IMG/VR virus record: IMGVR_UViG_3300024054_000362 | Location: 124,001-188,000 of that record | Direction: 5' to 3' (one strand) | DNA length: 64,000 nt | Shown here: positions 4,871 to 51,813 of the stretch, piece after piece | Position numbering within the stretch: position 1 is the stretch's first letter | Layout: each line of letters opens with the position of its first letter | Translations under genes and position numbers: made by a program | The notes under the pieces: generated by a model | Seen by the model: the letters and a program-made list of their open reading frames with translations, nothing else | The model's database searches: none | Told to the model about the DNA's origin: nothing

Positions 4871-4915
4871 ACGCTACCACGATCGCTGCTGCGATCGACG
4901 ATCGCCATAGCGATC
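4871..4915 (-). promoter_or_regulatory. putative late promoter: two GATCGC-N4-GCGATC palindromes (4881-4896, 4900-4915) + GTGG + TAGCGT -10 box
   Basis: -10 box ends 6 nt before the GTG at 4864. Confidence 0.7.
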
Positions 4916-4972
4916 GAGGTCGGACCGTAGAGCTGTACGTTTTCAAAACGGTGCGGTACCCCTGGGGTAGCG

Positions 4973-5533
4973 ATGGCGCGATCACTAAAGCCGCTCGGAC
5001 CCGGCACGGCACGGTTCAGTGCATGTAGAACCTGGCGATACGAACTGACGCGAGATCTATCAGGCTACCCGCGTCCTGCGGATCAGTTTCCGCCGAAGGG
5101 TGTACTCGTGTCGATTGGCCTCAACCCGTCGACGGCGACCGGTGACGACGACGATCCGACCGTTCACAAGGAATCGTTCTACACGATCTGGTGGGGCTAC
5201 GAACGCTTCATCAAGCTGAACGCGTACGCTTACCGCGCGACGAAGCCCGTCCACATGTTCGAGGCGCGAGACCGCGGCATCGACATCGTCGGACCTGAGA
5301 ACGACGCTGCCATCCGGTGCGCCGTCCAACTCGTCCGCCGGAACGGCGGACGCTTACTCGTGGCCTGGGGGAAAAACATCGAGCCCGAGCGTCAACGACG
5401 GATCGCGCAGCTGATTGGGCGCGACGTGCAAGCGTACTGCGTGGCCGTTAACAAGAACGGCACGCCAAAACACACATGCTATACCCGAGGTGACGCTGTC
5501 CCGATCCGGTGGATTTGTCCATATGGCGCGTAA
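4973..5533 (+). CDS. DUF1643 domain protein
   Basis: ARFSACRTWRYEL.R...IGLNPSTAT...DDPT...LNAYAYRATKP...VAWG. Confidence 0.85.
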   Translation: MARSLKPLGPGTARFSACRTWRYELTRDLSGYPRPADQFPPKGVLVSIGLNPSTATGDDDDPTVHKESFYTIWWGYERFIKLNAYAYRATKPVHMFEARDRGIDIVGPENDAAIRCAVQLVRRNGGRLLVAWGKNIEPERQRRIAQLIGRDVQAYCVAVNKNGTPKHTCYTRGDAVPIRWICPYGA

Positions 5534-6047
5534 AAAGAAGCTCGCTGCTGATGGTACCATTAGGCTATGGCTCGCCTACAAACGGCGTCGCGGTGAGAAA
5601 CCGCTGTTCGCCTTGATCGATCCCGAAGACTGGAAGTTAGCGGCGATTCCTTGGCGTGCCCAACGATCACACACTGGAGATTTTTACGCCGTCCGCGCGG
5701 TGTCCCTTGGGAAAGATCAAAAGACGCGGATGTTGTATCTGCATCGGGAAGTATTACAGGCACCCGAGAACGTGCAGGTAGATCACAAGAATGGCAATAC
5801 GCTAGACTGTCGTCGCGCCAATCTGCGCCCAGCGACGCATAAACAGAATCTTCAGAACGCGCGAAAGCCTCGACACAACACCTCAGGGTTTAAGGGCGTC
5901 GCACGCAGTGCCAACAACCGCTGGCGGGCGTACATCAAAGGCAAGTACCTTGGCCTGTTCGATTCGCCTGAGGAGGCCGCGCGTGCGTACGATCGCGCGG
6001 CCCGCGCGCAGTTTCAAAATTTCGCGCGGTGCAACTTTTCAGTGTAG
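5523..6047 (+). CDS. HNH endonuclease with C-terminal AP2 DNA-binding domain
   Basis: LHREVL...VDHKNGNTLDCRRANLRPATHKQN; SGFKGV...WRAYI...YLGLFDSPEEAARAYD. Confidence 0.9.
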   Translation: MARKKKLAADGTIRLWLAYKRRRGEKPLFALIDPEDWKLAAIPWRAQRSHTGDFYAVRAVSLGKDQKTRMLYLHREVLQAPENVQVDHKNGNTLDCRRANLRPATHKQNLQNARKPRHNTSGFKGVARSANNRWRAYIKGKYLGLFDSPEEAARAYDRAARAQFQNFARCNFSV

Positions 6048-6048
6048 C

Positions 6049-6414
6049 TCAGCCGCACGGAGGTCCGTCGGGACCTGACGGTGCGAGCAGATCGCAAGGT
6101 GGCATCTGATTGCCGTCGAAGATGTCTTGCATCTTCGAGAACAAATCGCTGACGTCACCGAAACCCGACTTTTCTTCATCGACAGGCTTGGGTTCTGGAA
6201 CGCCGAGCTTCTCGCGAAGCGTCTTCTTGACGTCGGCAAGCTCGCTCTGAACCTTGCGATGCTCCTCAGCGAGACGTCGCTCGGCCTCTTCAAATTCGCG
6301 TCGCCGCGCTTCAGATCGCAAGCGAAACGCGAATTCGGCGCCTTGAAGCAGCTGCAGTCGCTCGACGAGCTTGTAGATCTCGGCGCCCTGCAGCTTGATG
6401 AACGGGTCGCTCAC
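6049..6414 (-). CDS. hypothetical coiled-coil protein
   Basis: Glu/Arg/Lys helical heptads; overlap with upstream gene. Confidence 0.6.
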   Translation of the reverse strand: MSDPFIKLQGAEIYKLVERLQLLQGAEFAFRLRSEARRREFEEAERRLAEEHRKVQSELADVKKTLREKLGVPEPKPVDEEKSGFGDVSDLFSKMQDIFDGNQMPPCDLLAPSGPDGPPCG

Positions 6415-6698
6415 GATGGATCCTGCCGTTGGCGAATCTCGTCGAGCTTGGCGAGAATCGCTTGGGCGAACGGTTGTAGTGCCTCCATGAAGCGATCGAC
6501 GTCGCTCTCGTCACCACCATCTGAAGGCCGCGCCGGAGGCACGTGACTGGAATCGAATTTTGTCGTCAAGGTGATCTTGATCGGCCCGGCGATCTCGATC
6601 GTCTTGACCTGCGTTGACGTGTACGGGGTCTTGGTGGCGTCGGTGTCGCCATCGGAAGCTGGCTTGGCCATAAGGCGTTTCGATAATGCTCGCGACAA
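6411..6698 (-). CDS. hypothetical protein
   Basis: 95-aa ORF coupled to the downstream gene. Confidence 0.55.
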   Translation of the reverse strand: MSRALSKRLMAKPASDGDTDATKTPYTSTQVKTIEIAGPIKITLTTKFDSSHVPPARPSDGGDESDVDRFMEALQPFAQAILAKLDEIRQRQDPS

Positions 6699-6729
6699 GC
6701 GCTGTCAAGGCGGCTTGTTAGGCCGACCC

Positions 6730-6755
6730 GATCGCTCGCGCGATCGTGGTAATCT
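6730..6755 (+). promoter_or_regulatory. putative late promoter GATCGCTCGCGCGATC-GTGG-TAATCT
   Basis: Palindrome 6730-6745; -10 at 6750-6755; ATG 9 nt later; no SD. Confidence 0.7.
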
Positions 6756-6764
6756 TACATCACC

Positions 6765-7649
6765 ATGCTCACAGTCTATCGACAGCAAGGGTTCGGCTTA
6801 CCGCTGGGCCAAGGAGCGGCGCCGTCGTCGGCGATTGATCAGGCCGCCGCGACGCTCATGGTTGCGCTCGAAGATGGGACCGTTCCCGAGGGCGTCGTTG
6901 CGATGCTTCGAAATTTCTCAGCCCTCGATCTGACCTTGATCGCCGGTCGCGCCATCGGCCTGGGGGCGAACGCGGCTCTGGTGCGGCAAGCAGTCGAGGC
7001 AGCTGCCGGAGCGGGGACGGCGAGCCCGACAGCTCAAGCCGACCCAACCACCATCCGACTACTACAGGCGCAGATCAATCGATTCTTCGTCGGTTCATTC
7101 GGCATCGCGCAACAGATGGCCGAGACTGGCGTTATCGATGCTGAGACCGTCGCGCAGCTACCCCGCGCGGCACAGATCGCATTGGACATAGCAGGCCCGT
7201 TGGATCTTAGCGCGATCGCAACGCTGGCTCCTGCCGCGGCCGCCAATCTAAACGCACAGGGAATCGCGCAGAATGCGTCCGCGCTCGTCGACGCCTTCAC
7301 GCGAATCATAATTCCGGCTGCAGAAGACGCCGCGATCGCGGAGCAAGCTACCGTCGAGCTGGTTCACGAAGACATCTCCGCCGAGCAACGTCCGAAGATC
7401 GTCGCCGCGGCGGCGCAGGCAGCAGCTCAGGTCAAAGCGCAGGGCGGCTCGCAGGCTGAGCAGCAAGCAGCCGCCCGGACGGCTGCACAGCAAGCTGTCG
7501 TCGCCACCAAGAAGAAGTTTTTCGACGTGAAGAATCCGAAGTTCTGGGTCGCCGTCGGTGGTGGCGTCGCTGCCGTGGTCGTGATCGGCGCAGCGATCAA
7601 GTTGTTCGCCCGCCGCCCCGCCGTCATGGTGACACGCGCCGCGCGCTAG
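6765..7649 (+). CDS. Ala-rich putative virion protein with C-terminal membrane anchor
   Basis: C-terminal FWVAVGGGVAAVVVIGAAIKLFARR hydrophobic helix plus basic tail; N-terminal QGFG/PLG motifs. Confidence 0.7.
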   Translation: MLTVYRQQGFGLPLGQGAAPSSAIDQAAATLMVALEDGTVPEGVVAMLRNFSALDLTLIAGRAIGLGANAALVRQAVEAAAGAGTASPTAQADPTTIRLLQAQINRFFVGSFGIAQQMAETGVIDAETVAQLPRAAQIALDIAGPLDLSAIATLAPAAAANLNAQGIAQNASALVDAFTRIIIPAAEDAAIAEQATVELVHEDISAEQRPKIVAAAAQAAAQVKAQGGSQAEQQAAARTAAQQAVVATKKKFFDVKNPKFWVAVGGGVAAVVVIGAAIKLFARRPAVMVTRAAR

Positions 7650-7945
7650 CAGGTCGGCTTGCGTCGTGCGTAGAACCGACCGCCAATCGCGCCCACAGTG
7701 ACGGCACCTGCCGCGGCGAGGCCTGCTTTGAGGCCTGGCTTTGGTGCAGGAGCGCCAGCGACTTTTTGAAGTTGACGATCGCGCGTTGTGGCGATGAAGA
7801 ACCCCGCGGTTGCGGCTACTAGGCCGATAGCACCGCCCGCGAGCATGCCGTAGATGCCGCGTTCTTTCTTTGGCGTGAACGAGCACTCGGCGTCCGCCAA
7901 GGCGTCATCGTGGTTCCGTCGGCGTCCGAGCGTGGCCTTCTTCAT
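7646..7945 (-). CDS. small two-TM membrane protein
   Basis: MKKATLGRRR N-terminus, two hydrophobic segments; ATG 7 nt after a -10 box. Confidence 0.65.
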   Translation of the reverse strand: MKKATLGRRRNHDDALADAECSFTPKKERGIYGMLAGGAIGLVAATAGFFIATTRDRQLQKVAGAPAPKPGLKAGLAAAGAVTVGAIGGRFYARRKPTC

Positions 7946-7952
7946 GTCGTTG

Positions 7953-7978
7953 AAGTTACCACGATCGCGCGAGCGATC
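7953..7978 (-). promoter_or_regulatory. putative late promoter, palindrome 7963-7978 + GTGG + TAACTT
   Basis: 24-nt inverted copy of the 6729-6752 element. Confidence 0.7.
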
Positions 7979-8033
7979 GACACACCCAGAACGGCCGTGC
8001 GCAGATGTCAAGACGATCTGTTAGGCTGCGGAT

Positions 8034-8246
8034 ATGGCGAAACGAAAGCGCGCTCTTGCCGGCCTGATGGACACGGTTCGTGCGGGATGCCGCGTCACGA
8101 TCGTCGATCGTTTCGGCGCGCAACGAACGGGTCGTGCCGTCATGAAGGGACCGCACGGCTGGGTGTTGAATCTCGGAGGACGACACGGAACCCCTGGGAT
8201 CGCGAGCGCGGATAACATCGTCAAGGTCAGCTGTTCGAAGAGGTAA
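8034..8246 (+). CDS. small beta-rich basic protein, paralog of the N-terminal half of 53831-54346
   Basis: RVTIVDRFGAQRTGRAVMKGPHGWVLNLGGRHGTPGIA vs RVTIVTPQGQQRTGTAVMRSSHGGWVLNMGGKHGTPGIA; TAGGCT lies 6 nt before the ATG. Confidence 0.7.
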   Translation: MAKRKRALAGLMDTVRAGCRVTIVDRFGAQRTGRAVMKGPHGWVLNLGGRHGTPGIASADNIVKVSCSKR

Positions 8247-8255
8247 GCTCCGCGG

Positions 8256-8680
8256 ATGGCGACCGATTCAGAGATCGCGTGGGCGGCTGGCCTGTTCGAA
8301 GGCGAAGGTAGTTGCTACGGCACCGTACGCAGCGATCGTTACAACACGAGGCGAATCCGTATGAACTTGCGGATGACGGATCAAGATGTCGTTGAACGCT
8401 TCGCGAAGGTTGTCGGTGTCGGCTCCGTATACGGCCCCATTCAACACGTGCGCGCCAGCGACGGCGTCCGGTTGAAGGACGTGTACGAATGGGGAACGGG
8501 TAGTTGGCACGTCGTCGTTGATCTGTACGCGTGTTCAAGCCGTGGTTGTGCACACGACGGCGTGGACAATTTGAACACGCGCTTCAGACAGCAAAACCGA
8601 AGTCGCCGGTTCGGCGCGCACACAAACTTGGTCCCAGACAAAATTTCAACTACAAGCAACGTACCGAAGTGACGCGATGA
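8256..8680 (+). pseudogene. free-standing LAGLIDADG endonuclease, frameshifted near 8532
   Basis: IAWAAGLFEGEG motif; the natural continuation FKPWLCTRRRGQFEHAL resumes in another frame at 8534 and ends at TGA 8680. Confidence 0.7.
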
Positions 8681-8722
8681 TCCTCAACATCACCAACGTT
8701 CGTTGCAGAAAGAAGAAGTGAC

Positions 8723-9025
8723 ATGGCGCGCAAGTTCGACGAGACGGTTCGCAAGATCGCCGATCGTATCGCCGACGGTCGGATCATCCTGACCGAACGT
8801 GTTCGACAGGGTCGCAAACGGAACATCTCCGTCGGTCCCTACCGAACCGCGACGTCGTCCAAGCGCCAGTACGCGATGTGCACGCTGCCAGCGCTTCCAG
8901 GCTCCGACGACTGCCAGGTATCCCTGAACCCCAACCGTGTCGCGAAGCAATTCGTTCGCCTCGTCGGCACGGACAACGCGCAGAACGCGCTTGTTCGCGA
9001 ATCGCAGAAGCGTCACGGTAGATAG
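8723..9025 (+). CDS. hypothetical basic protein
   Basis: 100-aa ORF coupled to the Nudix gene. Confidence 0.55.
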   Translation: MARKFDETVRKIADRIADGRIILTERVRQGRKRNISVGPYRTATSSKRQYAMCTLPALPGSDDCQVSLNPNRVAKQFVRLVGTDNAQNALVRESQKRHGR

Positions 9026-9408
9026 TGTCGACGTACGGCGCCGCCGTCATCATCGAAGACGACCGCGGACGCGTGTTGCTTCTCAAGCGCAGTCCCACGA
9101 TGTCGTGGAAGCCGGGTCGCTGGAATCTTCCTGCCGGTCACGTCGAGCCAGGTGAGTTGGCCGCGGAGGCGGCCGTCCGGGAGGCATACGAGGAGGCGGG
9201 TCTTCGTGTGGCCAAAGTGATGCCAGTCGTGCGCGTGCACTTTGCGCCGTTCGTCGTCGACGTCTACCACTCGGTCGATTGGACCGGACGTGTTCGTCTG
9301 AACGCCGAGAGCATCGCCTTCAAGTGGGTTCCCGTCGGGGATGCGTGCCGGGATGACCTTCTGCGGACGCATCGTGATGCTCTTCGATGGTTTGCTGATC
9401 GTTACTAG
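9025..9408 (+). CDS. Nudix hydrolase
   Basis: Nudix box GHVEPGELAAEAAVREAYEEAGL. Confidence 0.92.
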   Translation: MSTYGAAVIIEDDRGRVLLLKRSPTMSWKPGRWNLPAGHVEPGELAAEAAVREAYEEAGLRVAKVMPVVRVHFAPFVVDVYHSVDWTGRVRLNAESIAFKWVPVGDACRDDLLRTHRDALRWFADRY

Positions 9409-9430
9409 GTTGGGTGTCCGTTTGCGTCTT

Positions 9431-9457
9431 GGTCGCCGGAGGTCGACCCCGTTTTTT
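9431..9457 (+). terminator. possible intrinsic terminator
   Basis: GGTCG/CGACC stem followed by a T6 run, downstream of the Nudix gene; stem is weak. Confidence 0.3.
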
Positions 9458-13354: not shown

Positions 13355-13987
13355 ATGATTCTGAACATGAGCAACCTCAAGGGCTACCAAGTGCGCCTCG
13401 CGTCCGATCAGAAGGACGAGATCCGTGCTCTGTATCTCGGCGGAACGCCGTATCAGAAGATCATCAAGCAGTTCAAGTGCAGCCCGAGCAGCTTCTGGAA
13501 CGTGGTTCGCGGTCTCCAGTTGCAGGTGCGCGACGAGAAGTTTCAACAGGGCGTCGTACAGATGCAGGCGCTCGCCGACGCACAGAAAGGCTGGATCGCC
13601 GGGATCGTTGACGGCGAAGGCTACGTTGGGCTTGTCGAGAACGCGACGCCGAACCGCGCAACGTCGCTGACGCCTCGGATCGATGTACACAGTGCGACGA
13701 GGTGTATGCAATTAGAGCTGCGACGCCTAACAGGCATCGGCTATATCGGCCGTAAGCAGCGACCTGAAAACCAACGAGACGTCTTCGGTTGGTCGCTGTG
13801 GGCTGTCGAAACAGTTGGACCGTTCCTTGAAGTCATCACCCCGTATCTGATCGTCAAGCGACGCGTGGCGCACGTCGTTTTGGAGTTCTGTTCGCGCCGC
13901 CGCGCGTTGCGCGGCCAACCGTACGACGCTCGCGACTGGCACGCTCTCAAGCGTGTTCGTGAGCTGAACAAGCGAGGTCGATCGTGA
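13355..13987 (+). CDS. LAGLIDADG homing endonuclease with N-terminal HTH
   Basis: GWIAGIVDGEGYV...FLEVITPYLIVKR. Confidence 0.85.
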   Translation: MILNMSNLKGYQVRLASDQKDEIRALYLGGTPYQKIIKQFKCSPSSFWNVVRGLQLQVRDEKFQQGVVQMQALADAQKGWIAGIVDGEGYVGLVENATPNRATSLTPRIDVHSATRCMQLELRRLTGIGYIGRKQRPENQRDVFGWSLWAVETVGPFLEVITPYLIVKRRVAHVVLEFCSRRRALRGQPYDARDWHALKRVRELNKRGRS

Positions 13988-16163: not shown

Positions 16164-17219
16164 ATGGTCGATAAGAAGTCGAAGAAGAGCGACAAGCGTG
16201 GGCGCACCGAAGCGTCGCGCGGCAACCTGTGGGGCTTCGATCCGAACGCCCTCTGTATCATCGGCGGCCAGAAGATCCGCAACAAGGACGAGATCGGTCC
16301 CCTCGACACCGACGACGGTGAAGAGCACGACCACTGGGACGAGCGTCTACTGACGCCGATCACCGAGGAGGAGATCGCGCACGCCGACGCGTTTGGAATC
16401 GACGGCGTCGCGTACATCGCCAAGAAGAACGGGATCGACGTCGTCGTCGCCGGCCGCCGCAAGACGCGCGTGGGTCGCCTCGTCAACAAGCGTCGCAAGG
16501 AACGTGGCGGAGATCCGCTCGTCATCGACTGCAAGGTCGTGCGCGGCTCCGATCTCGATCTCATGGGCAAGGCTGTCAGCGAGAACGAGATGCGCGTCAA
16601 CGACGGCGTCTTGGTCAAGATCGCAAAGGCCAAGCGCCTCAAGAACAAGGGCCTCTCCGACGAGAAGATCGCGCTGCGCTTCGGCATCAAGCGTCCCGTG
16701 CTCGACGGCTGGTGGAAGTTCGACGATCAGGCGATCGACGAGACCAAGCGCGCGGCCGAGATGGATCGCTTGTCGCCGACGGCGGCAGCCCGTATCGCGT
16801 CCATCAAGGATCCCGTCGCGCAGAAGAAGGCGCTCGACGAAACGCTCGCCTTCGAGGGCAAGGCGTCGTCACGTACGGCGCGTGTCATCGCCGGCAAGCA
16901 CGGTTCGGGCGGGATCGTCGGGATCACCGACAAGAAGACGCAGCGCCGCCTGATCTCGTACATCGAGGAGACCCCGGAGCGCTCGAACACGAGCGAGGAA
17001 ACGATCGCGCGGCGTGAGGGTATGATCGCGGCCCTGAAGGCGGTCGTCGGCGACGAGATCAACGATCCGTGGCTCTCCAAGAAGATCGACGAAGTCTACG
17101 GCCTCATGAAGACCGAGGCGCGTGCGAAGCGTCTGGAGAAGGTCCAGAAGCAGGCGAAGAAGGCGAAGAAGGCGAAGGCGGAGGCGGAAGCCGCCGAAGT
17201 CGAGGTCGAGGTCGAGTAG
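16164..17219 (+). CDS. ParB/Spo0J-like protein
   Basis: VVVAGRRK (GxRR-like), SENEMR, HTH (GLSDEKIALRFGIKRPVL), Lys/Ala/Glu-rich tail. Confidence 0.65.
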   Translation: MVDKKSKKSDKRGRTEASRGNLWGFDPNALCIIGGQKIRNKDEIGPLDTDDGEEHDHWDERLLTPITEEEIAHADAFGIDGVAYIAKKNGIDVVVAGRRKTRVGRLVNKRRKERGGDPLVIDCKVVRGSDLDLMGKAVSENEMRVNDGVLVKIAKAKRLKNKGLSDEKIALRFGIKRPVLDGWWKFDDQAIDETKRAAEMDRLSPTAAARIASIKDPVAQKKALDETLAFEGKASSRTARVIAGKHGSGGIVGITDKKTQRRLISYIEETPERSNTSEETIARREGMIAALKAVVGDEINDPWLSKKIDEVYGLMKTEARAKRLEKVQKQAKKAKKAKAEAEAAEVEVEVE

Positions 17220-23400: not shown

Positions 23401-23825
23401 TGAAATCGCTCGTCTTCCAGACCGACGCGACGACCTACGAGCTGGGCTTACAAGAACAGCACAAGCTCGTCACCGGACCGCGCGGTTTGGAAGTTCGAAC
23501 GCGTGTGGTGTTGATCGTCCCGCGTCGAACGCTGACGAGCATGCTCACCGAAGTCGACGACGGCACGCAAGAAGATGACATCCGTGAAGCGATCAAAGCG
23601 GCATCTCTCGCCGACAACTGGACACTCGCCAGTGAGATTGCACAGCGCTACGGTCTGGTTGTTTGTTTGGCGTGCGCTGCTGACGTCGGTCAGCGGCCGA
23701 CATGGCGTCTCCATCGACTGATGCGCGAGCTACGCGATCTCGACAACCAACCGGCGTTCGCCGCAGACTGGGGCGAGATCTGCGGCTCGTGTGCCGTCCA
23801 ACTCAAGGAGCAATACAGTGGGTAA
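23400..23825 (+). CDS. hypothetical protein with two CxxC motifs
   Basis: CLAC...CGSC; TGATG overlap. Confidence 0.6.
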   Translation: MKSLVFQTDATTYELGLQEQHKLVTGPRGLEVRTRVVLIVPRRTLTSMLTEVDDGTQEDDIREAIKAASLADNWTLASEIAQRYGLVVCLACAADVGQRPTWRLHRLMRELRDLDNQPAFAADWGEICGSCAVQLKEQYSG

Positions 23826-24313
23826 AGAGTGGCCGTACATTCAGTCGAGCGGCGCCGATGTCAGCGCCAAGAAGGCGCGCGAGCGTTTCACGTCGCTCGA
23901 AGCCGAACTGGCTGCGGTCGGCGCCAAGATCAACGTGCCGATCCTGATGATCCACGACGAGATTCGTTTCGATGTCGATGTTCCCGAGGGCATGGAGGCG
24001 CAGGTCGCCGCGATCATGGACAAGTACTTCCCGAATCCGACGCTGGGGCTACGCGAGCGCGTCGGTCAGATCATGTCGCAGGTCGGCCCTACTCCGTTGA
24101 CCCTCGATGTCACCCCCAGGCACGGTCAAACGTGGGAGCGTCTTCACCGGTCTGCTCGACACGCTTCGTGGCGGGTTTCCGAAACTGCATCTGTACGTCG
24201 AGAACGTCTTCGAAGACCGTTTCCAGAGCTTCCTCAAGGGCTACGGATTCGTGTTGGTCGACGAGACCTCGTGGCCGCCGTCGTTCATTCTGCCGGCAGG
24301 AGTTCCGTCATGA
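23818..24313 (+). pseudogene. hypothetical gene with apparent one-base frameshift at C5 run 24113-24117
   Basis: Removing one C joins ...LTLDVTP to GTVKRGSVFTGLLDTLRGGFPKLHLYVENVFEDRF..., which ends in an ATGA overlap with the next gene. Confidence 0.5.
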
Positions 24314-24723
24314 GCCTAGAGCACGACGATCGTCACAACCCGCGCGGCTTCGAGAACCCAAACGACGTCGCGCGCATGCACGGCGAACAGTTCTGCGGTG
24401 CCGTCCCCGAAGGCGAGGGTAGTTACCCGCGCCACTGTTTCCACGGCACAGGCGAGAACCTTGCGTGCTGCTGGTGCGGTGACTGCTTCGTCGGCGACAA
24501 CGCACACAGCGTCCACGGCGACAACTTCCACCCATTGACGCCTCGCGAGGTCGAGGTCGTCACGTTGATGGCCGAGGGTCTTTCGAACAAGCTGATCGCC
24601 GAGCGCCTCGACATCAGCGACCACACAGCCAAGTTCCACGTGCGCGCGGTAACCAAGAGGCTCGGGCAACAGACGCGTACGGGTGCAGCTGTCGCTGCGA
24701 TTCGTCGAGGGATCGTTCCATGA
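24310..24723 (+). CDS. LuxR-type HTH regulator with Cys/His-rich N-terminus
   Basis: LTPREVEVVTLMAEGLSNKLIAERLDISDHTAKFHVRAVTKRLG. Confidence 0.88.
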   Translation: MSLEHDDRHNPRGFENPNDVARMHGEQFCGAVPEGEGSYPRHCFHGTGENLACCWCGDCFVGDNAHSVHGDNFHPLTPREVEVVTLMAEGLSNKLIAERLDISDHTAKFHVRAVTKRLGQQTRTGAAVAAIRRGIVP

Positions 24724-34608: not shown

Positions 34609-34745
34609 GTTCCGCAGCTTCATGCGGGAACTAGTTACTCCAGCGATCGCCACCGAAGCCGACCAGAACGAACTGGAGCTGCTCGTGCTCGAAATCGTCG
34701 AAGGTCAGCTCAACCGCGCACGGCTTGTGTATAGTCGAGAACAAG

Positions 34746-34997
34746 ATGATTGCCGCGATCGAGCTACCAGACAAGCTGTGCGTGATCCGTTGGGTAGGTC
34801 GTGAACGTCTTCACGTAGCCGTAGTAACCGTCTGTGGCACCAAAATGAACGTCGACAGAGGCGTAGTGCAAGTACCGGACTTCGTTCTCGATGGTCGGCC
34901 CGTCATGAGCTTCTCCGACTTCGACGGCCAGGGCCGTCGTCCGCTCAAGATCTGCGAAACCTGCAAGAACGCGATCGCGGCTGCGATCAAGGGCTGA
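34746..34997 (+). CDS. hypothetical protein
   Basis: VCGT...ICETC motifs. Confidence 0.5.
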   Translation: MIAAIELPDKLCVIRWVGRERLHVAVVTVCGTKMNVDRGVVQVPDFVLDGRPVMSFSDFDGQGRRPLKICETCKNAIAAAIKG

Positions 34998-38019: not shown

Positions 38020-38086
38020 GTTGCCTCAATCCTACACCGGAAACAGCACCTTGATCGCGCGAACGATCGCGCAGTAAGGTCCCGCG

Positions 38087-38341
38087 ATGCCACGAGGTAA
38101 GAAGCCGGACACCGACGAAGCGTGGGGATTCTACGGCGGTCCGCCGCACGAAGAGGGACGTTCGGCGCGAGCGCTCGCCGAGCTGGTTCGCAACACGAAG
38201 CTACGCACGCTGCACGACATGTCCGAACGTGAGATCCGTGCGCTGGAACGCTTCTACGGCTGTCCTGTGATCAGACCGGCTAGACTGCCGAAATCGTCGC
38301 GTCAACGCAACCGCGCTGTCCTCGCGGCTCTCGTAGCTTGA
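38087..38341 (+). CDS. hypothetical basic protein
   Basis: TAAGGT lies 6 nt before the ATG; near-palindrome at 38053-38068. Confidence 0.5.
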   Translation: MPRGKKPDTDEAWGFYGGPPHEEGRSARALAELVRNTKLRTLHDMSEREIRALERFYGCPVIRPARLPKSSRQRNRAVLAALVA

Positions 38342-44380: not shown

Positions 44381-44419
44381 ACCCTATCCATACCATCGAT
44401 CGCGCACGGGAAGCGAGTT

Positions 44420-44446
44420 GATCGCGCGAGCGATCGGGGGTACCGT
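44420..44446 (+). promoter_or_regulatory. putative late promoter, palindrome 44420-44435 + GGGGG + TACCGT
   Basis: Upstream of the 44498 operon. Confidence 0.6.
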
Positions 44447-44497
44447 TCAGGCACCTCGCTCGACTTCGTCGAGCCCGGCTACGGCTAGGAGGCGATC

Positions 44498-46767: not shown

Positions 46768-47418
46768 ATGCAGGTGATCGTCAGCATGACGTCGATTCCG
46801 GCGCGCAACGGCCGACTCGCGTCGACGCTCGCCTCGTTGCAATCACAGACACGGCTGCCAGACGAGATTCGGCTCTACCTCGGGCCTGGATGTGCGCTCG
46901 TCGCAGACGTGACGTGCGTCGATGTTGAAGATCGCGGGCCGATCACCAAGTTGTCAGCGGTCGTGGATCCAGAAATTCCTGACGACGCGTTGATTGTTAC
47001 CGTCGACGACGACATCCTCTACGAACCGACTTGGCTGGAGACGTTGGTGGCTGCCGCTGAAGCGTCGCCGGGAGCGGTAGTTGGACGTTCGGGCTGGTTG
47101 GTTGCAGACTTCCTGCGTAGCGAGCATCACGGCTACTTCATCTGGGCGCAGGAAGACACGTGCGACGTCCTAGAAGGCTGGGCGGGCGTTGCCTATCGCA
47201 AGAGCTTCTTCGACGGATCCGTACTCGAACCGCCGCCGGAGTTTCGACTTGTCGATGACGTTTGGATCTCTGGTTACCTCTATCGGCGTGGTATCGAACG
47301 TCGCATCGTTCGTCCACCGATGGCCATCCCCGATCCGAAGGGTCTGCCGGGTCTTCACAACAGGTCTGACTTCGTCAAACTCAACCGCAAAGCCGCACGG
47401 ATCGCCTTCGCACCATGA
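46768..47418 (+). CDS. GT-A glycosyltransferase-like protein
   Basis: IVSMTSIPAR...DRGPITKL...VTVDDDILY. Confidence 0.8.
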   Translation: MQVIVSMTSIPARNGRLASTLASLQSQTRLPDEIRLYLGPGCALVADVTCVDVEDRGPITKLSAVVDPEIPDDALIVTVDDDILYEPTWLETLVAAAEASPGAVVGRSGWLVADFLRSEHHGYFIWAQEDTCDVLEGWAGVAYRKSFFDGSVLEPPPEFRLVDDVWISGYLYRRGIERRIVRPPMAIPDPKGLPGLHNRSDFVKLNRKAARIAFAP

Positions 47419-48626
47419 ACCCTATCAAGCTGTCCATCTGCATCAGTTCGCTCAACAGTCGGCACGCAACGTTGCACCGTCTCGTACGGCAGCTCCAGAC
47501 ACAACCACGTAGCGACGAGATCGAGATCCTGATCGCTGCCGACGAGCGACGACATCCCACCGGTGCCAAGCGCAATCGGTTGGTGGCTTCTGCCGTTGGT
47601 GCCTACGTCGTTCACATCGACGACGATGACATGGTTGCGGTCGACTACGTCCCCAAGGTACTTGCTGCGATCGATGCGAATCGTGGCGTCGACGTCATCC
47701 TGCTTCGCGGTCGCCGTACGCATGTGGGTGGAGCTGCAGTCGTGTTCGACTATCGGCTCGGCGGTGAAGAAGGCGAAGTCGACAAGAACGGCGTCCTCTG
47801 GCGCAACCCGGCCCATTTGTGTCCCATCCGTGCGGACATCGCCAAGTCGGTTCCGTTTGAGGAGATCTGGTTCGCTGAAGATGTTCGTTGGCTCGAACAG
47901 GTCAAGCCTCTTCTCAAGACCGCTGCGCGCGCAGGCACACCTAACGAAGTGCTCTACAACTACCTATGGGAACCTAACAAGGACGTCTATATCTCCATGG
48001 TCACCGATCCGAAAGCCCCCAAGCCCGTCATGAAGATCGGCGGCGTCGTCATCGCAAACCCGGCAGCGACCGTCGACGTTTCCGATCACGAGTGCATCTT
48101 CGCGCCACAGTACGTCGAGCGATCAGGACCCGGCTCGACGGTCGAATTCAGTGCGCCGTACCGCGAGTTTCTGCGCAACTTCATCCGCGATCTGAAGATC
48201 CGTTCGATCGTCGATCTCGGCTGCGGTGACATGACCATCATGTCGAACGTCGACATGAACGACGCGCAATACCTAGGACTCGACGTCATTCCCGAACGCA
48301 TCAAGCGCAACCGCGTGAAGTGTCCGCAGCTGGCTTTCGAGCATCGCGACATTCACAAGGGGCCGTTCCCGGCTGCGGACCTCTTCATTTGCAAGGATGT
48401 CGTCCAACACTGGTCGAACGAGGACATCCAAGGCTGGCTCGTCGATCTGCGAAGGGCACACTTTCGCTTCGCGCTCGTTACAAACTGCAACTACGGGCCG
48501 ACGGTCAACACCAAGATCGCGACCGGCGGCTGGCGTGCAATCGACTTGACCAAATCGCCGTTCTCCGTCGGCGAAGTCGTCTTCACCTGGGGCAACAAGG
48601 ATGTCGTCCTACTGCGAGGCATGTGA
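47415..48626 (+). CDS. GT2 glycosyltransferase fused to a class I SAM methyltransferase
   Basis: GAKRNRL...VHIDDDD; SGPGS...IVDLGCGD...KDVVQHW. Confidence 0.85.
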   Translation: MNPIKLSICISSLNSRHATLHRLVRQLQTQPRSDEIEILIAADERRHPTGAKRNRLVASAVGAYVVHIDDDDMVAVDYVPKVLAAIDANRGVDVILLRGRRTHVGGAAVVFDYRLGGEEGEVDKNGVLWRNPAHLCPIRADIAKSVPFEEIWFAEDVRWLEQVKPLLKTAARAGTPNEVLYNYLWEPNKDVYISMVTDPKAPKPVMKIGGVVIANPAATVDVSDHECIFAPQYVERSGPGSTVEFSAPYREFLRNFIRDLKIRSIVDLGCGDMTIMSNVDMNDAQYLGLDVIPERIKRNRVKCPQLAFEHRDIHKGPFPAADLFICKDVVQHWSNEDIQGWLVDLRRAHFRFALVTNCNYGPTVNTKIATGGWRAIDLTKSPFSVGEVVFTWGNKDVVLLRGM

Positions 48627-49174
48627 TGCATCTCCACGAAATTCTCACTGCCGAGTTCAACCGTTTCGGCAACGCACCGCTCAACATCATCGAGACCGGT
48701 ACGATTCGCGGCGACAGTGAGGCGTCTCGCCTCGGTGACGGCTGGTCGACGCTCTGGTTCGCAGAGCGTCGTGCGCGATGCGGCGGTGAGCTGCTCTCGA
48801 TCGACCTGGACGTGTCGACGGCGGCAACGGTGCTCGCCGAGCACGGCGTCGCGGATGGCGTCGAACTGGAACAAGGCCACAGCATCGATCGTCTGGCGTT
48901 CCGTTGCCGTCGAGGTCGACGATGGGACGTCATCCTTCTCGACAGCGACAACGACGCACAGCTCATCCTGCACGAGTTTCTGATCGCGCAGCACCTCGTC
49001 ACCGATGGCGGTCTCGTCATGATCGATGACGTCCGTATGCCGAACCAACCGATCGGCGCCCTCAAGGGCGATCAGGTATGGCCCTACATCAAGAAGCGCG
49101 GTCTCGCGCATCACATCGTAGAGCGTGAAGGCTGGAACGGTTATCGCACGGGCGTACTCACCGTCCAGCTGTGA
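48626..49174 (+). CDS. class I SAM-dependent methyltransferase (Methyltransf_24-like)
   Basis: IIETGT...WST...SIDLD...ILLDS...GGLVMIDD. Confidence 0.8.
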   Translation: MHLHEILTAEFNRFGNAPLNIIETGTIRGDSEASRLGDGWSTLWFAERRARCGGELLSIDLDVSTAATVLAEHGVADGVELEQGHSIDRLAFRCRRGRRWDVILLDSDNDAQLILHEFLIAQHLVTDGGLVMIDDVRMPNQPIGALKGDQVWPYIKKRGLAHHIVEREGWNGYRTGVLTVQL

Positions 49175-49570
49175 CTACTGGCCGGGGTTGTACGTGTCCG
49201 CGTCGCCGGGTCCCACGATCGAGTGTGGATCCCAGAAGAGCACGTTCGGTGTCACTGTCACCGGTGGCGAGCTGGTGTTGGTGAACGTGACCTTTACGGT
49301 GTTGGTCGCTGGGTCGACGAACGGCTCGCCGTGGGTGATGCCTGTCCAGTCCGATAGCGGCGCCATCGGGATCACCTGGATACGCGACGCCGGAAGGGTA
49401 CCGTCGGCAGGTCCCGGTGGTGCCACTGTCACACCGAGAGGCGGTTCGCCGATCGACTCGCTCTCGAACGACCTGTTGACCTGGGTGAGACCGGTGTCGA
49501 TGGTCGTCACGCCGCCCGCCAGCGTCATGCGCTGACGATTCCAGAGAAGCTGTCCTGCCTTCTTGCTCAT
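49175..49570 (-). CDS. putative virion protein, paralog of 44858-45250
   Basis: Direct alignment with the paralog; AGGAG RBS. Confidence 0.75.
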   Translation of the reverse strand: MSKKAGQLLWNRQRMTLAGGVTTIDTGLTQVNRSFESESIGEPPLGVTVAPPGPADGTLPASRIQVIPMAPLSDWTGITHGEPFVDPATNTVKVTFTNTSSPPVTVTPNVLFWDPHSIVGPGDADTYNPGQ

Positions 49571-49623
49571 GGTTTCTCCTGTGCCGTAGCCGGATCCCGC
49601 AAAATGCGGGACGAGGTTCCATG

Positions 49624-49650
49624 AAGCTACACCCGATCGCGCGAGCGATC
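49624..49650 (-). promoter_or_regulatory. putative late promoter, palindrome 49635-49650 + GGGTG + TAGCTT; 5' UTR hairpin at 49595-49611
   Basis: Seen directly in the sequence. Confidence 0.65.
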
Positions 49651-50332
49651 AACGCCGCCTACGATAACGTCGACCTACGCCCGCGCTGCCGTGCCGCTTG
49701 GCGCGCCAACGGGACACGCCATACACGATTCCGGCACCGAGCCCAGCAAGCACAACGGCCGCGCCGGCTCCGACGAGGATCGGATGGTCGAGGGCGAACT
49801 GGGCCGCCGGATGCTTGTTGAGGAAGATCGCTGTGTCGAGGACAGGAATCAGCTTATCGACGCCGGAGCCCGTCGAAGTAGCTGGCGCAGAACCGTCAGC
49901 GGGTACGGGTGCCTTGGCAGCTTCTTGCGCCTTCAAGGTCTGAAGGCGTTCGATCACCTGTGGAAGTGCAGGGTCCTGTGCGATCTGAAGAATCGTGTCG
50001 AGGTGCGGTCCGGCTTGCGTGAGGATCTGTTGGAGCTTCGCAAGCAGCTCGGGAGCCTGCTGCACGATGGCGGCGATGTCGCTGGTGATGTCGCCAAGGC
50101 CGTTCGACATGAAAGGCAGCCGCGCAAGGCGGGACTGCAAATCGAAATCGTCATCGGTCGACCACACCGTCGGCCAGTTCTTGGGCTGACCTGGGATCGC
50201 GCCGACGCCGGCAAGGCCGGGGGGTTGCGGGATGAAATGGAAGACGCGACCAGCGCGTGCGATCGCGTCTTCTTGCGCATCGGTCGAGAGCACTCGCACG
50301 GAGCCGCCAAGCTGATGTTGAAGTGCGAGCAC
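49649..50332 (-). CDS. putative virion membrane protein (internal NGLG, C-terminal TM, GVG-RRYRRRR tail)
   Basis: LVGAGAAVVLAGLGAGIVYGV hydrophobic helix. Confidence 0.7.
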   Translation of the reverse strand: MLALQHQLGGSVRVLSTDAQEDAIARAGRVFHFIPQPPGLAGVGAIPGQPKNWPTVWSTDDDFDLQSRLARLPFMSNGLGDITSDIAAIVQQAPELLAKLQQILTQAGPHLDTILQIAQDPALPQVIERLQTLKAQEAAKAPVPADGSAPATSTGSGVDKLIPVLDTAIFLNKHPAAQFALDHPILVGAGAAVVLAGLGAGIVYGVSRWRAKRHGSAGVGRRYRRRR

Positions 50333-50338
50333 GGTCCA

Positions 50339-50365
50339 AGCCTATCATCGATCGCGCGAGCGATC
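50339..50365 (-). promoter_or_regulatory. putative late promoter, palindrome 50350-50365 + GATGA + TAGGCT
   Basis: GTG start 6 nt after the -10 box. Confidence 0.7.
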
Positions 50366-50418
50366 ACGACTCAGCCTTTGTGCTTCCCCATCGCGGATCC
50401 CGTAGTAGGGTCGCCGAC

Positions 50419-51000
50419 ATGACGATCGAATCTCTCATCGTTGCGATCCTTGCCATCACGGGCACAGCAGCGCCGCACACGTCCAAGAATGCGCGCGTGC
50501 ACGCAGAGAGCGCACAGGCAGTCGCCACCGTCGATTTCCCGGTCGAAGTTCTCCTCGGTACGGCCTACGTCGAATCGCGCTTCTATCAGACGGCGCTGAG
50601 TCGGTTGGAGGATTGTACGGATCCGAAGGATCCTAAAACCTGCATTCGAAAGACCGGCGTGTGGGCCAGCCATGTACCGCCGCCGACGGCGCGACCGGAC
50701 TGGTACTGTGGGCCGCTACAGACGGGCGGCTGGGTCACGTGGGCCGAGTGTCAGCGGATGCGGACGGACGTGCTGTACGGTTACCAGCAGGGCGTGCGCG
50801 AGCTGACGAAGTGGTGGAACGATCCGAGCTGTTCGCGACTACCGGATGACGATCGGCTGCGTTGTACGCTTGCCGGACACAACGCCGGGTATGCAGGTGC
50901 GGCGAACTACAAGGTCTCGCCGTACGTTCGTGACGTGTTCAAGGCGCGCGATCGGATCGTGAAGATCACCGAGCACGAAGAGTTGAAGCCGGGTAGCTAG
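50419..51000 (+). CDS. lytic transglycosylase (SLT-like) with N-terminal hydrophobic signal
   Basis: AYVESRF (catalytic Glu), GPLQ, AGHNAG, YVRDV. Confidence 0.7.
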   Translation: MTIESLIVAILAITGTAAPHTSKNARVHAESAQAVATVDFPVEVLLGTAYVESRFYQTALSRLEDCTDPKDPKTCIRKTGVWASHVPPPTARPDWYCGPLQTGGWVTWAECQRMRTDVLYGYQQGVRELTKWWNDPSCSRLPDDDRLRCTLAGHNAGYAGAANYKVSPYVRDVFKARDRIVKITEHEELKPGS

Positions 51001-51326
51001 CGGCGCTTCTTGCGGCGGCTCTTGCGCTTGCGCGAGCGGCCGAGATTCGTGGGACAGAGACTGCCGTGGTAGAGCAGCGTGCCGGCAGGGTATCCACGGT
51101 TTTGCCGAGTCTGATTCCGCTCGGTGTACCAGTCGACGACCTTACGGTTCGTCGAGGACGAACACGGCACGTAGCATTGGATGTCGCCGCGCTGGCTCGG
51201 CTTCCCCGACGCCATCGCGACGTCGACGCACTCGCGCGTACTGAGGCCGTGGCGCTGCGCGGCGCGGCGCGCGCTTTTCATTGGGCCCTTGACGATCAAC
51301 GAGACGCTGTTCGCACGTGTCGCCAC
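50997..51326 (-). CDS. Cys-containing basic protein with LG-Arg tail, paralog of the C-terminal half of 53831-54346
   Basis: VSLIVKGPMKS...CV...DIQCYVPC...W...GTLLYHG. Confidence 0.7.
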   Translation of the reverse strand: MATRANSVSLIVKGPMKSARRAAQRHGLSTRECVDVAMASGKPSQRGDIQCYVPCSSSTNRKVVDWYTERNQTRQNRGYPAGTLLYHGSLCPTNLGRSRKRKSRRKKRR

Positions 51327-51328
51327 GG

Positions 51329-51766
51329 TTAGCGTCCTGCGGTGCGGTTCTTGGTGCGGCCCGCGTAGCGGTAGAGCGCGACGCCGAACACTGCGAGCGC
51401 ACCACCGACGGCGAGCGCGCCACCGGCGACGAGCATGTTCGAAACCGTCGGGCTCTGGTTCGCGAGGAACGAGTCGATGCCGCCGAACTGACGTCGGTAG
51501 GGGATCACGGTCTGGCCTCCGTTGATGGACGTGAAGTAGCTGGGGTCGCAGTAGTCGCAGACAGGTCCGCGTGCGGGGTAGCGGCGGCGGTACATCTGCG
51601 GCGTGCCGCCGGGGCCGTAGACCGGTGTCGCGACGCGGGTCGGTCCGACGATGGCCTGATGTGGCGCGAGCGGCTGACCAGCCGATGGAAAAGACACCGT
51701 GGGCTCGTCGCGCAGCCCTGCGAGCTGCGCGTCACTGAGACCTTCCAAGGTGAATACGTGGGGCAC
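51329..51766 (-). CDS. Pro/Tyr-rich protein with C-terminal TM anchor
   Basis: MLVAGGALAVGGALAVFGVALYRY + basic tail; AAGGAG RBS. Confidence 0.65.
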   Translation of the reverse strand: MPHVFTLEGLSDAQLAGLRDEPTVSFPSAGQPLAPHQAIVGPTRVATPVYGPGGTPQMYRRRYPARGPVCDYCDPSYFTSINGGQTVIPYRRQFGGIDSFLANQSPTVSNMLVAGGALAVGGALAVFGVALYRYAGRTKNRTAGR

Positions 51767-51787
51767 TGGGTCAGCTCCTTGCTCTAC

Positions 51788-51813
51788 AACCTACCACGAT
51801 CGCGTGCGCGATC
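51788..51813 (-). promoter_or_regulatory. putative late promoter, palindrome 51798-51813 + GTGG + TAGGTT
   Basis: Seen directly in the sequence. Confidence 0.7.

What the first reader, a model, noticed from the sequence alone, without database searches (positions are those of the whole stretch)
4871..51813. New late-promoter architecture: 16-bp palindrome GATCGC-N4-GCGATC adjacent to a TAnnnT -10 box
Seen: seven intergenic or gene-boundary copies are followed after 4-5 nt by a -10 hexamer: 4881 (-, TAGCGT; second palindrome at 4900), 6730 (+, TAATCT), 7963 (-, TAACTT), 44420 (+, TACCGT), 49635 (-, TAGCTT), 50350 (-, TAGGCT), 51798 (-, TAGGTT). Five have an extended -10 TGn. All precede structural-looking genes (collagen fibre, TM-anchored proteins, the 130-aa paralog operons). 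Inferred: a dimeric phage activator binds in place of the -35 element, reminiscent of Mu Mor/C. Candidate binders in the window are the ParB-like protein, the inactive recombinase, and the XRE and LuxR HTH proteins.
Basis: partly seen in the sequence, partly recalled or inferred. Interest (0 to 1): 0.8.

Follow-up and report, generated by a model that had tools for sequence, protein, structure and literature searches.

The report
Palindromic operator at jumbo-phage promoters
A 16-base palindrome that recurs 36 times in an uncultured 221-kb lake phage is a real, conserved protein-binding site at host-type promoters, but its varied positions suggest a shared repressor's operator, not a new activator-dependent late promoter.

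Summary
GATCGC-N4-GCGATC occurs 10 times in the window, against 0.05 expected. Only the N4 spacing is enriched, and 8 of the 10 copies are non-coding. Seven copies have a TAnnnT hexamer 4-5 nt away, and the start codons fit that reading: three are leaderless, 6-7 nt after the hexamer.

The window is part of a 221-kb lake-water phage genome. Related genomes at about 70% nucleotide identity keep the palindrome and the -10 at orthologous promoters.

I tiled 99% of the genome and found 36 copies. The palindrome sits 3 to 20 nt upstream of the -10, so its centre ranges from -23.5 to -40.5 across all helical phases. It also sits at +5/+6 or +28 downstream of consensus TTGACA-N17/18-TAnnnT promoters, just upstream of -35 boxes, and as a pair inside the replication operon.

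The core promoters look self-sufficient. They carry either an extended -10 (TGn) or a TTGATC -35, never both.

That pattern fits an operator for one dimeric repressor that controls a genome-wide regulon, as in P1 C1, L5 stoperators or phiC31 CIRs. It fits an activator replacing the -35 less well. The binder, the timing and the host are all unknown. For the activator reading, the closest precedent is the P1 Lpa late promoters.

The parts
4881..4896 (-). Palindrome GATCGCTGCTGCGATC. On the - strand it is followed by gtgg, then TAGCGT (4876-4871), then 6 nt, then GTG at 4864, the leaderless start of the collagen-like gene 3641-4864.
4900..4915 (.). Second palindrome, 3 nt from the first (centres 19 bp apart). 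It has no -10 at 4-5 nt. It is a tandem operator in the divergent region between 4864(-) and the DUF1643 gene at 4973(+).
   Evidence: the same 3-nt tandem occurs in relative L002 at 3261/3280
6730..6755 (+). Palindrome, gtgg, then TAATCT (6750-6755). ATG 6765 lies 9 nt further on and starts a 294-aa tail-anchored membrane protein.
7953..7978 (-). Palindrome (7963-7978), gtgg, then TAACTT (7958-7953). The leaderless ATG at 7945 lies 7 nt further on and starts a 99-aa membrane protein.
34973..34988 (.). Palindrome at the 3' end of ORF 34725-34997, with no promoter features. It is either a coding coincidence (it reads ...IAAAI...) or a site of unknown role.
38051..38089 (+). One-mismatch palindrome GATCGCGCGAACGATC (38053-38068). 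The preceding tt makes a TTGATC -35-like box. A 6-nt gap, TAAGGT (38075-38080) and 6 nt lead to the leaderless ATG at 38087.
44418..44446 (+). TTGATC -35-like box (44418-44423) made of tt plus the palindrome's first four bases. Palindrome at 44420-44435, a 5-nt gap with no TGn, then TACCGT (44441-44446). A 51-nt leader with a hairpin and Shine-Dalgarno sequence runs to ATG 44498 (116-aa gene, then a 130-aa paralog).
49624..49652 (-). Same design on the - strand: TTGATC (49652-49647), palindrome 49650-49635, a 5-nt gap, then TAGCTT (49629-49624). A 53-nt structured leader runs to ATG 49570 (131-aa paralog).
50339..50365 (-). Palindrome (50365-50350), gatga (TGn), then TAGGCT (50344-50339). The leaderless GTG at 50332 lies 6 nt further on and starts a 227-aa tail-anchored protein. 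The site is conserved in L014 at 6532 and L015 at 2667.
51788..51813 (-). Palindrome (51813-51798), gtgg, then TAGGTT (51793-51788). A 21-nt leader with aaggag runs to GTG 51766. The site is conserved in four related genomes.
55866..55911 (-). Composite site on the - strand: perfect palindrome (55911-55896), atc, TTGACG (55892-55887), 5 nt, then the imperfect palindrome GATCGCTCGTGGGATC (55881-55866). The right half of the imperfect copy supplies GATCTT 17 nt after the -35. The arrangement is conserved in L014, L030 and L066.
56948..57976 (-). Context: Dam-family (GATC-type) N6-adenine DNA methyltransferase. Each operator half-site contains a GATC.
2642..2956 (+). Candidate binder, untested: a 104-aa XRE/Cro-type HTH protein. 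A homologue at 68% identity with the same neighbours exists in a related genome. No palindrome lies near the gene.
23791..24723 (+). Candidate binder, untested: a 310-aa protein with a C-terminal LuxR/GerE HTH domain.

Best explanation
GATCGC-N4-GCGATC is the operator of one dimeric, sequence-specific DNA-binding protein. It has two 6-bp half-sites one helical turn apart. The operator is embedded in, or placed next to, promoters read by the host's primary-sigma RNA polymerase. Those promoters are TAnnnT -10 boxes with either an extended -10 TGn or a -35, and many give leaderless mRNAs. Most likely the protein is a repressor. In most copies the operator covers the DNA where sigma region 4 and the spacer contacts of the polymerase must sit. 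In other copies it lies just after the start site, in the 5' leader, or inside an operon as a roadblock, often in tandem pairs that would bind cooperatively. One protein would thus hold about 30 dispersed transcription units under common negative control. These units include tail-anchored membrane proteins, a collagen-like fibre, a lysis cassette, the 130-aa paralog operons and probably the replication operon.

Shown: the motif, its enrichment, its conservation, its association with -10 elements and start codons, and its variable position.

Inferred: that a protein binds it, that binding represses, and that the polymerase is the host's. Whether this is an immunity-type master repressor or a timing device of a lytic cycle is unknown.
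For: Enrichment and spacing: there are 10 copies in the window against 0.05 expected. There are 36 in 218.9 kb against 0.75 expected from half-site counts, and 28 of them are non-coding. Only N4 is enriched.

Conservation: palindromes recur in relatives at about 70% identity, at orthologous promoters where these are covered by the fetched loci, while the flanks drift. The same motif also recurs, often before a -10, in contigs whose relatedness to this phage I did not establish (57-59% GC, 61 and 150 kb).

Real -10 elements: 11 of 34 gap-4/5 sites have ATG or GTG exactly 6 nt after the hexamer (p = 3e-9).

Variable position: gaps are 3, 4 (8 sites), 5 (5 sites), 7, 8 (2), 9 (2), 10 (3), 14, 16, 17 and 20 nt, which puts the centres between -23.5 and -40.5. 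Copies start at +5, +6 and +28 after TTGACA-N17/18-TAnnnT promoters, and these positions are conserved in relatives. Other copies lie 0-6 nt upstream of -35 boxes. Two of these gaps (14 and 20) are the second, opposite-strand reading of a copy already counted, and one gap-9 reading is a secondary one that falls inside a gene model.

Self-sufficient core promoters: of 29 clade sites, 18 have TGn without TT, 8 have TTGATC at 17 nt without TGn, and none has both. Extended -10 leaderless promoters without the palindrome exist.

Coherent targets: adjacent paralogous tail-anchored membrane-protein genes sit behind the upstream-type and the downstream-type arrangements alike, which is simplest if both are regulated the same way.

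Tandem pairs have centre spacings of 19, 23 and 30 bp.
Against: No binding protein has been identified, and no candidate gene has the operator at its own promoter.

There are no transcript data: no RNA run holds the sequence.

Thirteen of 36 copies share one tight position, centre -24.5 or -25.5. That position resembles the P1 late promoters, where an inverted repeat next to a -10 is an activator site.

Two targets, the lysis cassette and the fibre gene, are classically late functions, and late genes in well-studied phages are under positive control (PMC10695390).

The TGn versus TTGATC contrast rests largely on orthologues and paralogs, so the number of independent cases is small.

Loci from relatives were fetched with patterns that required a -10 at 4-5 nt, so only the source genome gives an unbiased sample of positions.
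Confidence: 0.6

Rival explanations
1. A dimeric phage activator binds the palindrome next to the -10 and recruits host RNA polymerase to promoters that lack a -35, as Lpa does at the P1 late promoters.
For: Thirteen of 36 copies have the palindrome 4-5 nt from a TAnnnT. Most of those lack a -35. Targets include a holin-like gene plus GH25 endolysin cassette and a collagen-like fibre. P1 has 11 late promoters with a 9-bp inverted repeat bound by Lpa. From my own recollection, not checked here, that repeat is centred near -22.
Against: The centres occupy every helical phase from -23.5 to -40.5. Several conserved copies lie downstream of consensus promoters or inside an operon, where a protein cannot activate. 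The promoters carry TGn or a -35 and so should not need a helper. No Lpa-like gene was recognised.
Confidence: 0.12
2. A dual-function switch protein. It represses where the site lies over or after the start site of consensus promoters, and it activates where the site is centred at -24.5 or -25.5. This would flip the programme from one gene set to another, as phi29 p4 or lambda CI do.
For: There are two clearly different arrangements: strong TTGACA-N17/18 promoters with a downstream site, and -35-less promoters with an upstream site.
Against: Neighbouring paralogous membrane-protein genes sit behind both arrangements, so opposite regulation is not parsimonious. Intermediate gaps of 7-17 nt fill the space between the two classes.
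Confidence: 0.15
3. The site is read by a host protein, or through its methylation state. Each half-site holds a GATC, and the phage and its relatives encode a Dam-family methylase. Occupancy could therefore depend on unmethylated, hemimethylated or fully methylated DNA and be coupled to replication.
For: The Dam-like gene is closest to DpnM, E. coli Dam and T4 Dam. It is conserved at 66-71% identity in relatives. GATC is kept in all copies, including those in contigs of unconfirmed relatedness.
Against: GATC is common throughout the genome (689 in the window, close to the Markov expectation). The flanking CGC/GCG bases are just as invariant as the GATC. A scan of 185,579 species genomes found only single, scattered matches to the motif plus -10 pattern, and none in a sequence related to the phage.
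Confidence: 0.08
4. The palindrome is not a protein operator. It acts instead as an RNA or DNA hairpin (a terminator or processing site) or as a recombination site.
For: A 6-bp stem with a 4-nt loop can fold. A pair at genome position 202384-202422 forms a 39-bp perfect hairpin.
Against: Most copies lie upstream of the inferred start sites and so would not be transcribed. No T-run follows them. The loop sequence is free and unoriented. The arms are too short and the spacer too small for tyrosine or serine recombinase core sites (established knowledge).
Confidence: 0.03

Closest known systems
Phage P1 C1 repressor and its dispersed operators
   Same: One repressor site recurs many times around a large phage genome. 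It overlaps or adjoins the promoters of separate lytic operons, including replication and late-control genes (own knowledge; P1 has at least 45 transcription units). The element here also carries plasmid-like features: a HigB toxin, ParB-like domains and tyrosine recombinases.
   Different: C1 operators are 17-bp asymmetric sites, whereas this one is a perfect 6-4-6 palindrome. No C1 homologue was seen, and a lysogenic or plasmid state is not shown.
Mycobacteriophage L5/Bxb1 gp71-type repressor with about 30 stoperators
   Same: Dozens of copies of one short site lie in short intergenic gaps on both genome arms. Some overlap promoters, and others lie inside transcription units, where they block elongation (PMC9283540 abstract). 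The promoter style is also the same: TAnnnT, extended -10 and leaderless starts.
   Different: Stoperators are 13-bp, asymmetric and orientation-dependent, and they are bound by a monomer. The site here is symmetric and suggests a dimer.
Streptomyces phage phiC31 repressor c and its conserved inverted repeats (CIRs)
   Same: A palindromic 17-bp operator is repeated at many promoters of one phage of a high-GC host (own knowledge, not checked here).
   Different: The sequence differs. phiC31 is 41 kb and its CIRs lie in the early region, whereas here the sites span a 221-kb genome.
P1 Lpa-dependent late promoters
   Same: A -10 hexamer sits next to a short inverted repeat where a -35 would be, repeated at 11 promoters (PMC10695390).
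   Different: Here the position varies by more than a helical turn and includes sites after the start point.
RK2 KorB/KorA global repressors
   Same: Palindromic operators lie at many promoters of one replicon, at varying distances from the promoter, and act cooperatively (own knowledge).
   Different: RK2 is a plasmid system with a ParB-family binder. Its 13-bp operator has a conserved centre, whereas the 4-bp centre here is free.

Membership tests
Activator-dependent late promoters of the P1 Lpa type | Inverted repeat at one fixed position next to the -10 | tested here: not met
   Gaps of 3-20 nt, plus copies at +5, +6 and +28 and copies upstream of -35 boxes. Only 13 of 36 copies have a gap of 4-5.
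Activator-dependent late promoters of the P1 Lpa type | Core promoter unable to work alone (no -35 and no compensating element) | tested here: not met
   18 of 29 sites have TGn and 8 of 29 have TTGATC at 17 nt. This is sequence evidence only; activity was not measured.
Activator-dependent late promoters of the P1 Lpa type | Cognate activator gene, with targets restricted to late genes | tested here: inconclusive
   No Lpa-like protein was recognised. Targets include the lysis cassette and the fibre gene, but also many unknown genes and the replication operon.
Dispersed repressor-operator networks (P1 C1, L5 stoperators, phiC31 CIRs) | Many copies of one site across the genome, concentrated between genes | tested here: met
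   36 copies against 0.75 expected, and 28 of them non-coding.
Dispersed repressor-operator networks (P1 C1, L5 stoperators, phiC31 CIRs) | Sites overlap core promoters or lie between promoter and gene, at varying positions | tested here: met
Dispersed repressor-operator networks (P1 C1, L5 stoperators, phiC31 CIRs) | Identified repressor that binds the site and confers immunity | not testable with these tools
   Candidates are the XRE protein, the LuxR/GerE protein and two HTH_17 proteins. None is linked to the site.
L5-type stoperators specifically | Asymmetric site acting in one orientation | tested here: not met
   The site is a perfect palindrome and its centre shows no orientation bias.
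MerR-type activator sites | Dyad inside an over-long (19-20 bp) spacer between the -35 and the -10 | tested here: not met
   Where a -35 exists the spacer is 17-18 nt, and most sites have no -35.
Primary-sigma extended -10 / leaderless promoters | TGnTAnnnT with the start codon at the expected start site | tested here: met
   The start sites themselves are not mapped.

The most novel reading that the evidence does not exclude
The operator is a replication-coupled timer. Each half-site carries a GATC, and the phage keeps a Dam-family methylase. The repressor may therefore distinguish unmethylated, hemimethylated and fully methylated operators, or may simply be titrated by the multiplying genome copies. 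Either way, about 30 host-type promoters, including lysis and fibre genes, would be released only after replication. Late genes would then be timed by loss of repression, not by the positive control seen in all well-studied phages.
Probability: 0.12. Interest if true: 0.7.

Novelty: new member of a known kind. Interest (0 to 1): 0.4.

Why it matters
The site gives a ready-made regulatory map of about 30 promoters and one operator for an uncultured 221-kb lake phage clade whose genes are almost all unannotated. The regulon groups otherwise anonymous genes into one co-regulated set: tail-anchored membrane proteins, the poly-arginine-tailed small proteins, the 130-aa paralogs, a lysis cassette and a fibre gene. 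The 16-mer is also a simple probe for finding the regulator by DAP-seq or pull-down, and for recognising relatives in metagenomes. If repression controls late functions here, that would be an exception to the rule that late genes are under positive control.

Tried and rejected
These steps led nowhere:
- Near-identity searches of GenBank phages found no match.
- No RNA run holds the sequence.
- A scan of species genomes for the motif plus -10 gave 85 single hits in unrelated taxa. None had a second palindrome or any homology beyond low-complexity repeat matches to one unconfirmed contig (L008). So there is no prophage, no host regulon and no host clue.
- Rfam and tRNA scans of the window found nothing.
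- The literature search found no description of this motif.
- Trying to infer the host from PyrF in the ESM Atlas was uninformative.
- The AlphaFold model of the 130-aa paralog (pLDDT 69, all-beta) had no significant PDB fold match.
- The Atlas search on a 359-aa target protein returned only a low-confidence model and no lead.
- Pfam and PHROGs were blank for most regulon genes, and no capsid, portal or terminase gene was recognised in the proteins I scanned or in the Pfam hits precomputed for the tiled contigs.
- RNAalifold on the paralog leaders was defeated by misalignment of the variable hairpin.
- The XRE gene region has no palindrome in either lineage, so there is no sign of autoregulation.

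Readings considered and rejected: the cyanobacterial HIP1 repeat (GCGATCGC occurs only 20 times), a recombinase core site, and a terminator.

Full report
**1. The observation**

GATCGC-N4-GCGATC occurs 10 times in the window, against 0.05 expected from dinucleotide-preserving shuffles. The half-sites are common: GATCGC occurs 113 times and GCGATC 122 times, because GATC is frequent in this 62% GC sequence. That gives a fairer expectation of about 0.2.

Only the 4-nt spacing is enriched, with 10 copies against 0-1 for every other spacing from 0 to 20 and for the other half-site arrangements. Eight copies lie wholly outside my gene models, although only 17% of the window is non-coding (p = 2e-5).

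The chance of that is about 0.01-0.02 per site, so p is about 1e-12. All hexamers and coordinates check out. Five have TGn.

Gene starts give independent support:
- GTG 4864, ATG 7945 and GTG 50332 lie 6-7 nt after the hexamer, where a leaderless mRNA would begin.
- ATG 6765 lies 9 nt after.
- The other three genes have leaders with Shine-Dalgarno sequences.

Across the source genome, its relatives and contigs that share the motif, 11 of 34 such sites have ATG or GTG exactly 6 nt after the hexamer (p = 3e-9).

**2. Where the window comes from, and conservation**

The window is bases 124001-188000 of IMGVR_UViG_3300024054_000362, which is 221,422 bp long. The same sequence was found in many lake-water metagenomes, on contigs of about 221.5 kb with different start points. 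It has no near relative among GenBank phages.

Three contigs shown to be related, at about 66-87% nucleotide identity over aligned segments or 35-85% protein identity, carry the same palindrome: one of 196 kb, one of 91 kb and one of 65 kb. So does a 31-kb contig. Where the fetched loci cover orthologous promoters, the palindrome sits at the same place.

At the promoter of the gene at 51766, five genomes keep both half-sites, the TGG-TAnnnT and the Shine-Dalgarno sequence, while the sequence between them changes. Contigs of 61 and 150 kb (57-59% GC) also carry the motif, often before a -10 hexamer, but I did not establish that they are related to this phage.

**3. The whole-genome picture changes the interpretation**

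I tiled 218,927 of the 221,422 bp from fetched loci. This stretch holds 36 perfect copies, against 0.75 expected from half-site counts, and 28 are fully non-coding.

Positions relative to recognisable promoter elements (sequences):

| Position of the palindrome | Detail |
|---|---|
| Upstream of a TAnnnT that has TGn, a -35-like TTGA, and/or a leaderless start | Gaps of 3 (1 site), 4 (8), 5 (5), 7 (1), 8 (2), 9 (2), 10 (3), 14, 16, 17 and 20 nt (1 each). The gaps of 14 and 20 are second, opposite-strand readings of copies already counted, and one gap-9 reading is a secondary one inside a gene model. Centres run from -23.5 to -40.5. |
| Downstream of consensus TTGACA-N17/18-TAnnnT promoters | Starts at +5, +6 and +28 (three cases) |
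| After TAGACT, directly before a Shine-Dalgarno sequence | Starts 8 nt after the hexamer (one case, read by eye; the rule-based tally left it unclassified) |
| Upstream of a -35 box | 0-6 nt upstream (four cases, including window 55896) |
| Inside the replication operon | A pair about 265 bp in. That operon's own TTGACA-N17-TAGCGT promoter has no palindrome. |
| Unclear or coding | Three copies, including window 34973 |

The downstream arrangements are conserved in the 196-kb and 91-kb relatives.

A protein that must touch RNA polymerase from one face of the helix cannot work from every phase between -23.5 and -40.5, and it cannot activate from +5 or +28. A repressor that acts by occupying the polymerase's footprint, or by blocking its path, can work from all of these positions. 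What the upstream positions share is that the palindrome always covers or adjoins the -35 zone.

**4. The core promoters look self-sufficient**

Among the 29 gap-4/5 sites in the source genome and its relatives, 18 have the extended -10 TGn and no -35. Eight have tt in front of the palindrome, which makes TTGATC exactly 17 nt from the hexamer, and these lack TGn. Three have neither, and none has both. This either-or pattern is what primary-sigma promoters need in order to fire unaided (established knowledge of extended -10 promoters).

The Fisher p of 4e-5 overstates the case, because the eight TTGATC sites are orthologues and paralogs of one promoter family. Extended -10 leaderless promoters with no palindrome within 45 nt also occur, for example at genome positions 68563, 75800, 84282 and 167143.

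**5. What is controlled**

- A collagen-like fibre protein (window 3641-4864; PHROG tail-fibre hits from the collagen repeats).
- A cassette of an 89-aa membrane protein, an 84-aa protein and a GH25 + PG_binding_1 endolysin, behind the site at genome position 38677.
- The 130-aa paralogs. These are all-beta with no fold match.
- An 865-aa coiled-coil protein.
- Above all, a large set of proteins that end in a transmembrane helix followed by an arginine run. These sit behind both the upstream-type and the downstream-type arrangements.

Because neighbouring paralogs are served by both arrangements, one mode of regulation is the simplest reading.

Timing cannot be read from the sequence, and no RNA run holds this genome.

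**6. Who binds**

This remains unknown. Candidates in the window are an XRE-type HTH protein (2642-2956) and a LuxR/GerE protein (23791-24723). The HTH_7 protein at 13355-13987 looks like a LAGLIDADG homing endonuclease, and the ParB likeness of 16164-17219 is weak. Two small HTH_17 proteins lie elsewhere in the genome.

The XRE protein has a homologue at 68% identity, with the same neighbours, in a related genome. Neither copy has a palindrome nearby.

A scan of one genome per bacterial species for the motif plus -10 gave only isolated hits. None had a second palindrome, and none matched the phage beyond low-complexity repeat matches to one unconfirmed contig (L008). So there is no sign of a host regulon or a prophage.

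**7. Host and lifestyle (inference only)**

Several features are typical of Actinobacteria:
- TAnnnT -10 boxes with TGn.
- 17-18 nt spacers.
- Frequent leaderless starts.
- 62% GC.

None is proof.

A HigB toxin, ParB-like domains and tyrosine recombinases hint at a temperate or plasmid-like state, in which a master repressor with dispersed operators would make sense. No virion hallmark gene was recognised in the proteins I scanned, or in the Pfam hits precomputed for the tiled contigs. The viral label therefore rests on IMG/VR, the lysis cassette and phage-family hits.

**8. Comparison with known systems**

As a dispersed repressor-operator network, this resembles P1 C1, the L5 stoperators and the phiC31 CIRs. 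It differs in being a perfect 6-4-6 palindrome in a 221-kb genome.

The 13 sites with gap 4-5 resemble those promoters, which keeps an activator or dual-function reading alive at a combined probability of about 0.27.

**9. Verdict**

The motif is real, strongly non-random and conserved, and it is tied to promoters. It is best read as the operator of a shared repressor (confidence 0.6). The 'new late-promoter architecture with an activator in place of the -35' is not supported as a general rule. It is a new member of a known kind of system.

Noticed in passing
window 10722, 13269, 19108, 38641, 38704, 40928 (+) and 10609 (-): A second conserved block, about 23 bp long: (A)GTTACTCTCGCTTTGTCGAATAA. 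It lies 40-85 nt upstream of genes of the DNA-metabolism type (the HTH_7/LAGLIDADG-like gene, the HATPase-like genes, DUF6011/ComM). It does not look like a sigma-70 promoter. It may be a second promoter class or another regulator's site.
   Followed up: partly
window 44447-44497 (+) and 49571-49623 (-); L014 4731, L015 1221/3630/5679, L030 9405, L037 1871: The leaders of the 130-aa paralog operons share ACCTC, a 5-6 bp hairpin whose stem changes by paired substitutions between copies (for example GTCGC/GCGAC, ATCGC/GCGAT, CTCGG/CCGAG), then CCGGCTACGGC before the Shine-Dalgarno sequence. This is a conserved 5'-UTR element. It is read by eye; RNAalifold misaligned it.
   Followed up: partly
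window 6765-7649, 7646-7945, 49649-50332, 51329-51766; L090 511-6088: A large family of proteins ends in ...KKPLFWV-(Gly/Ala-rich transmembrane helix)-RRRR, so they are tail-anchored. Several have long Pro/Thr/Gln-rich regions. Their function is unknown.
   Followed up: no
window 50997-55796 (- strand): A run of small proteins (65-177 aa) each ends in a poly-Arg/Lys tail, for example ...TRRRRKRRR.
   Followed up: no
genome 202384-202422 (L223 1777-1815): Two palindromes that are reverse complements of each other, 7 nt apart, form a 39-bp perfect hairpin. They lie about 265 bp downstream of the replication operon's consensus promoter, inside or just before the SNF2 helicase gene.
   Followed up: partly
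window 61080-63998 and beyond; L223 3532-5808: The family A DNA polymerase (1229 aa in full) carries an intein with a LAGLIDADG endonuclease. A second intein-containing gene lies in the same replication operon, along with several HNH and LAGLIDADG genes.
   Followed up: no
L231 14410-14709 (genome 26207-26506) and L231 10001-11320: A HigB-family toxin (Pfam E = 2e-33) with an adjacent small gene, and a second DNA methylase (N6_N4 type). These add to the plasmid-like features.
   Followed up: partly
L224 9735-11130 (genome about 38.7-40.1 kb): A lysis cassette of an 89-aa membrane protein, an 84-aa protein and a GH25 muramidase with PG_binding_1. It lies directly behind a palindrome plus extended -10 leaderless promoter.
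   Followed up: partly
whole genome: No capsid, portal or terminase gene was recognised in the proteins I scanned, or in the Pfam hits precomputed for the tiled contigs. Contigs of 221.4-221.7 kb from different samples start at different points, which suggests a circular or circularly permuted genome.
   Followed up: partly
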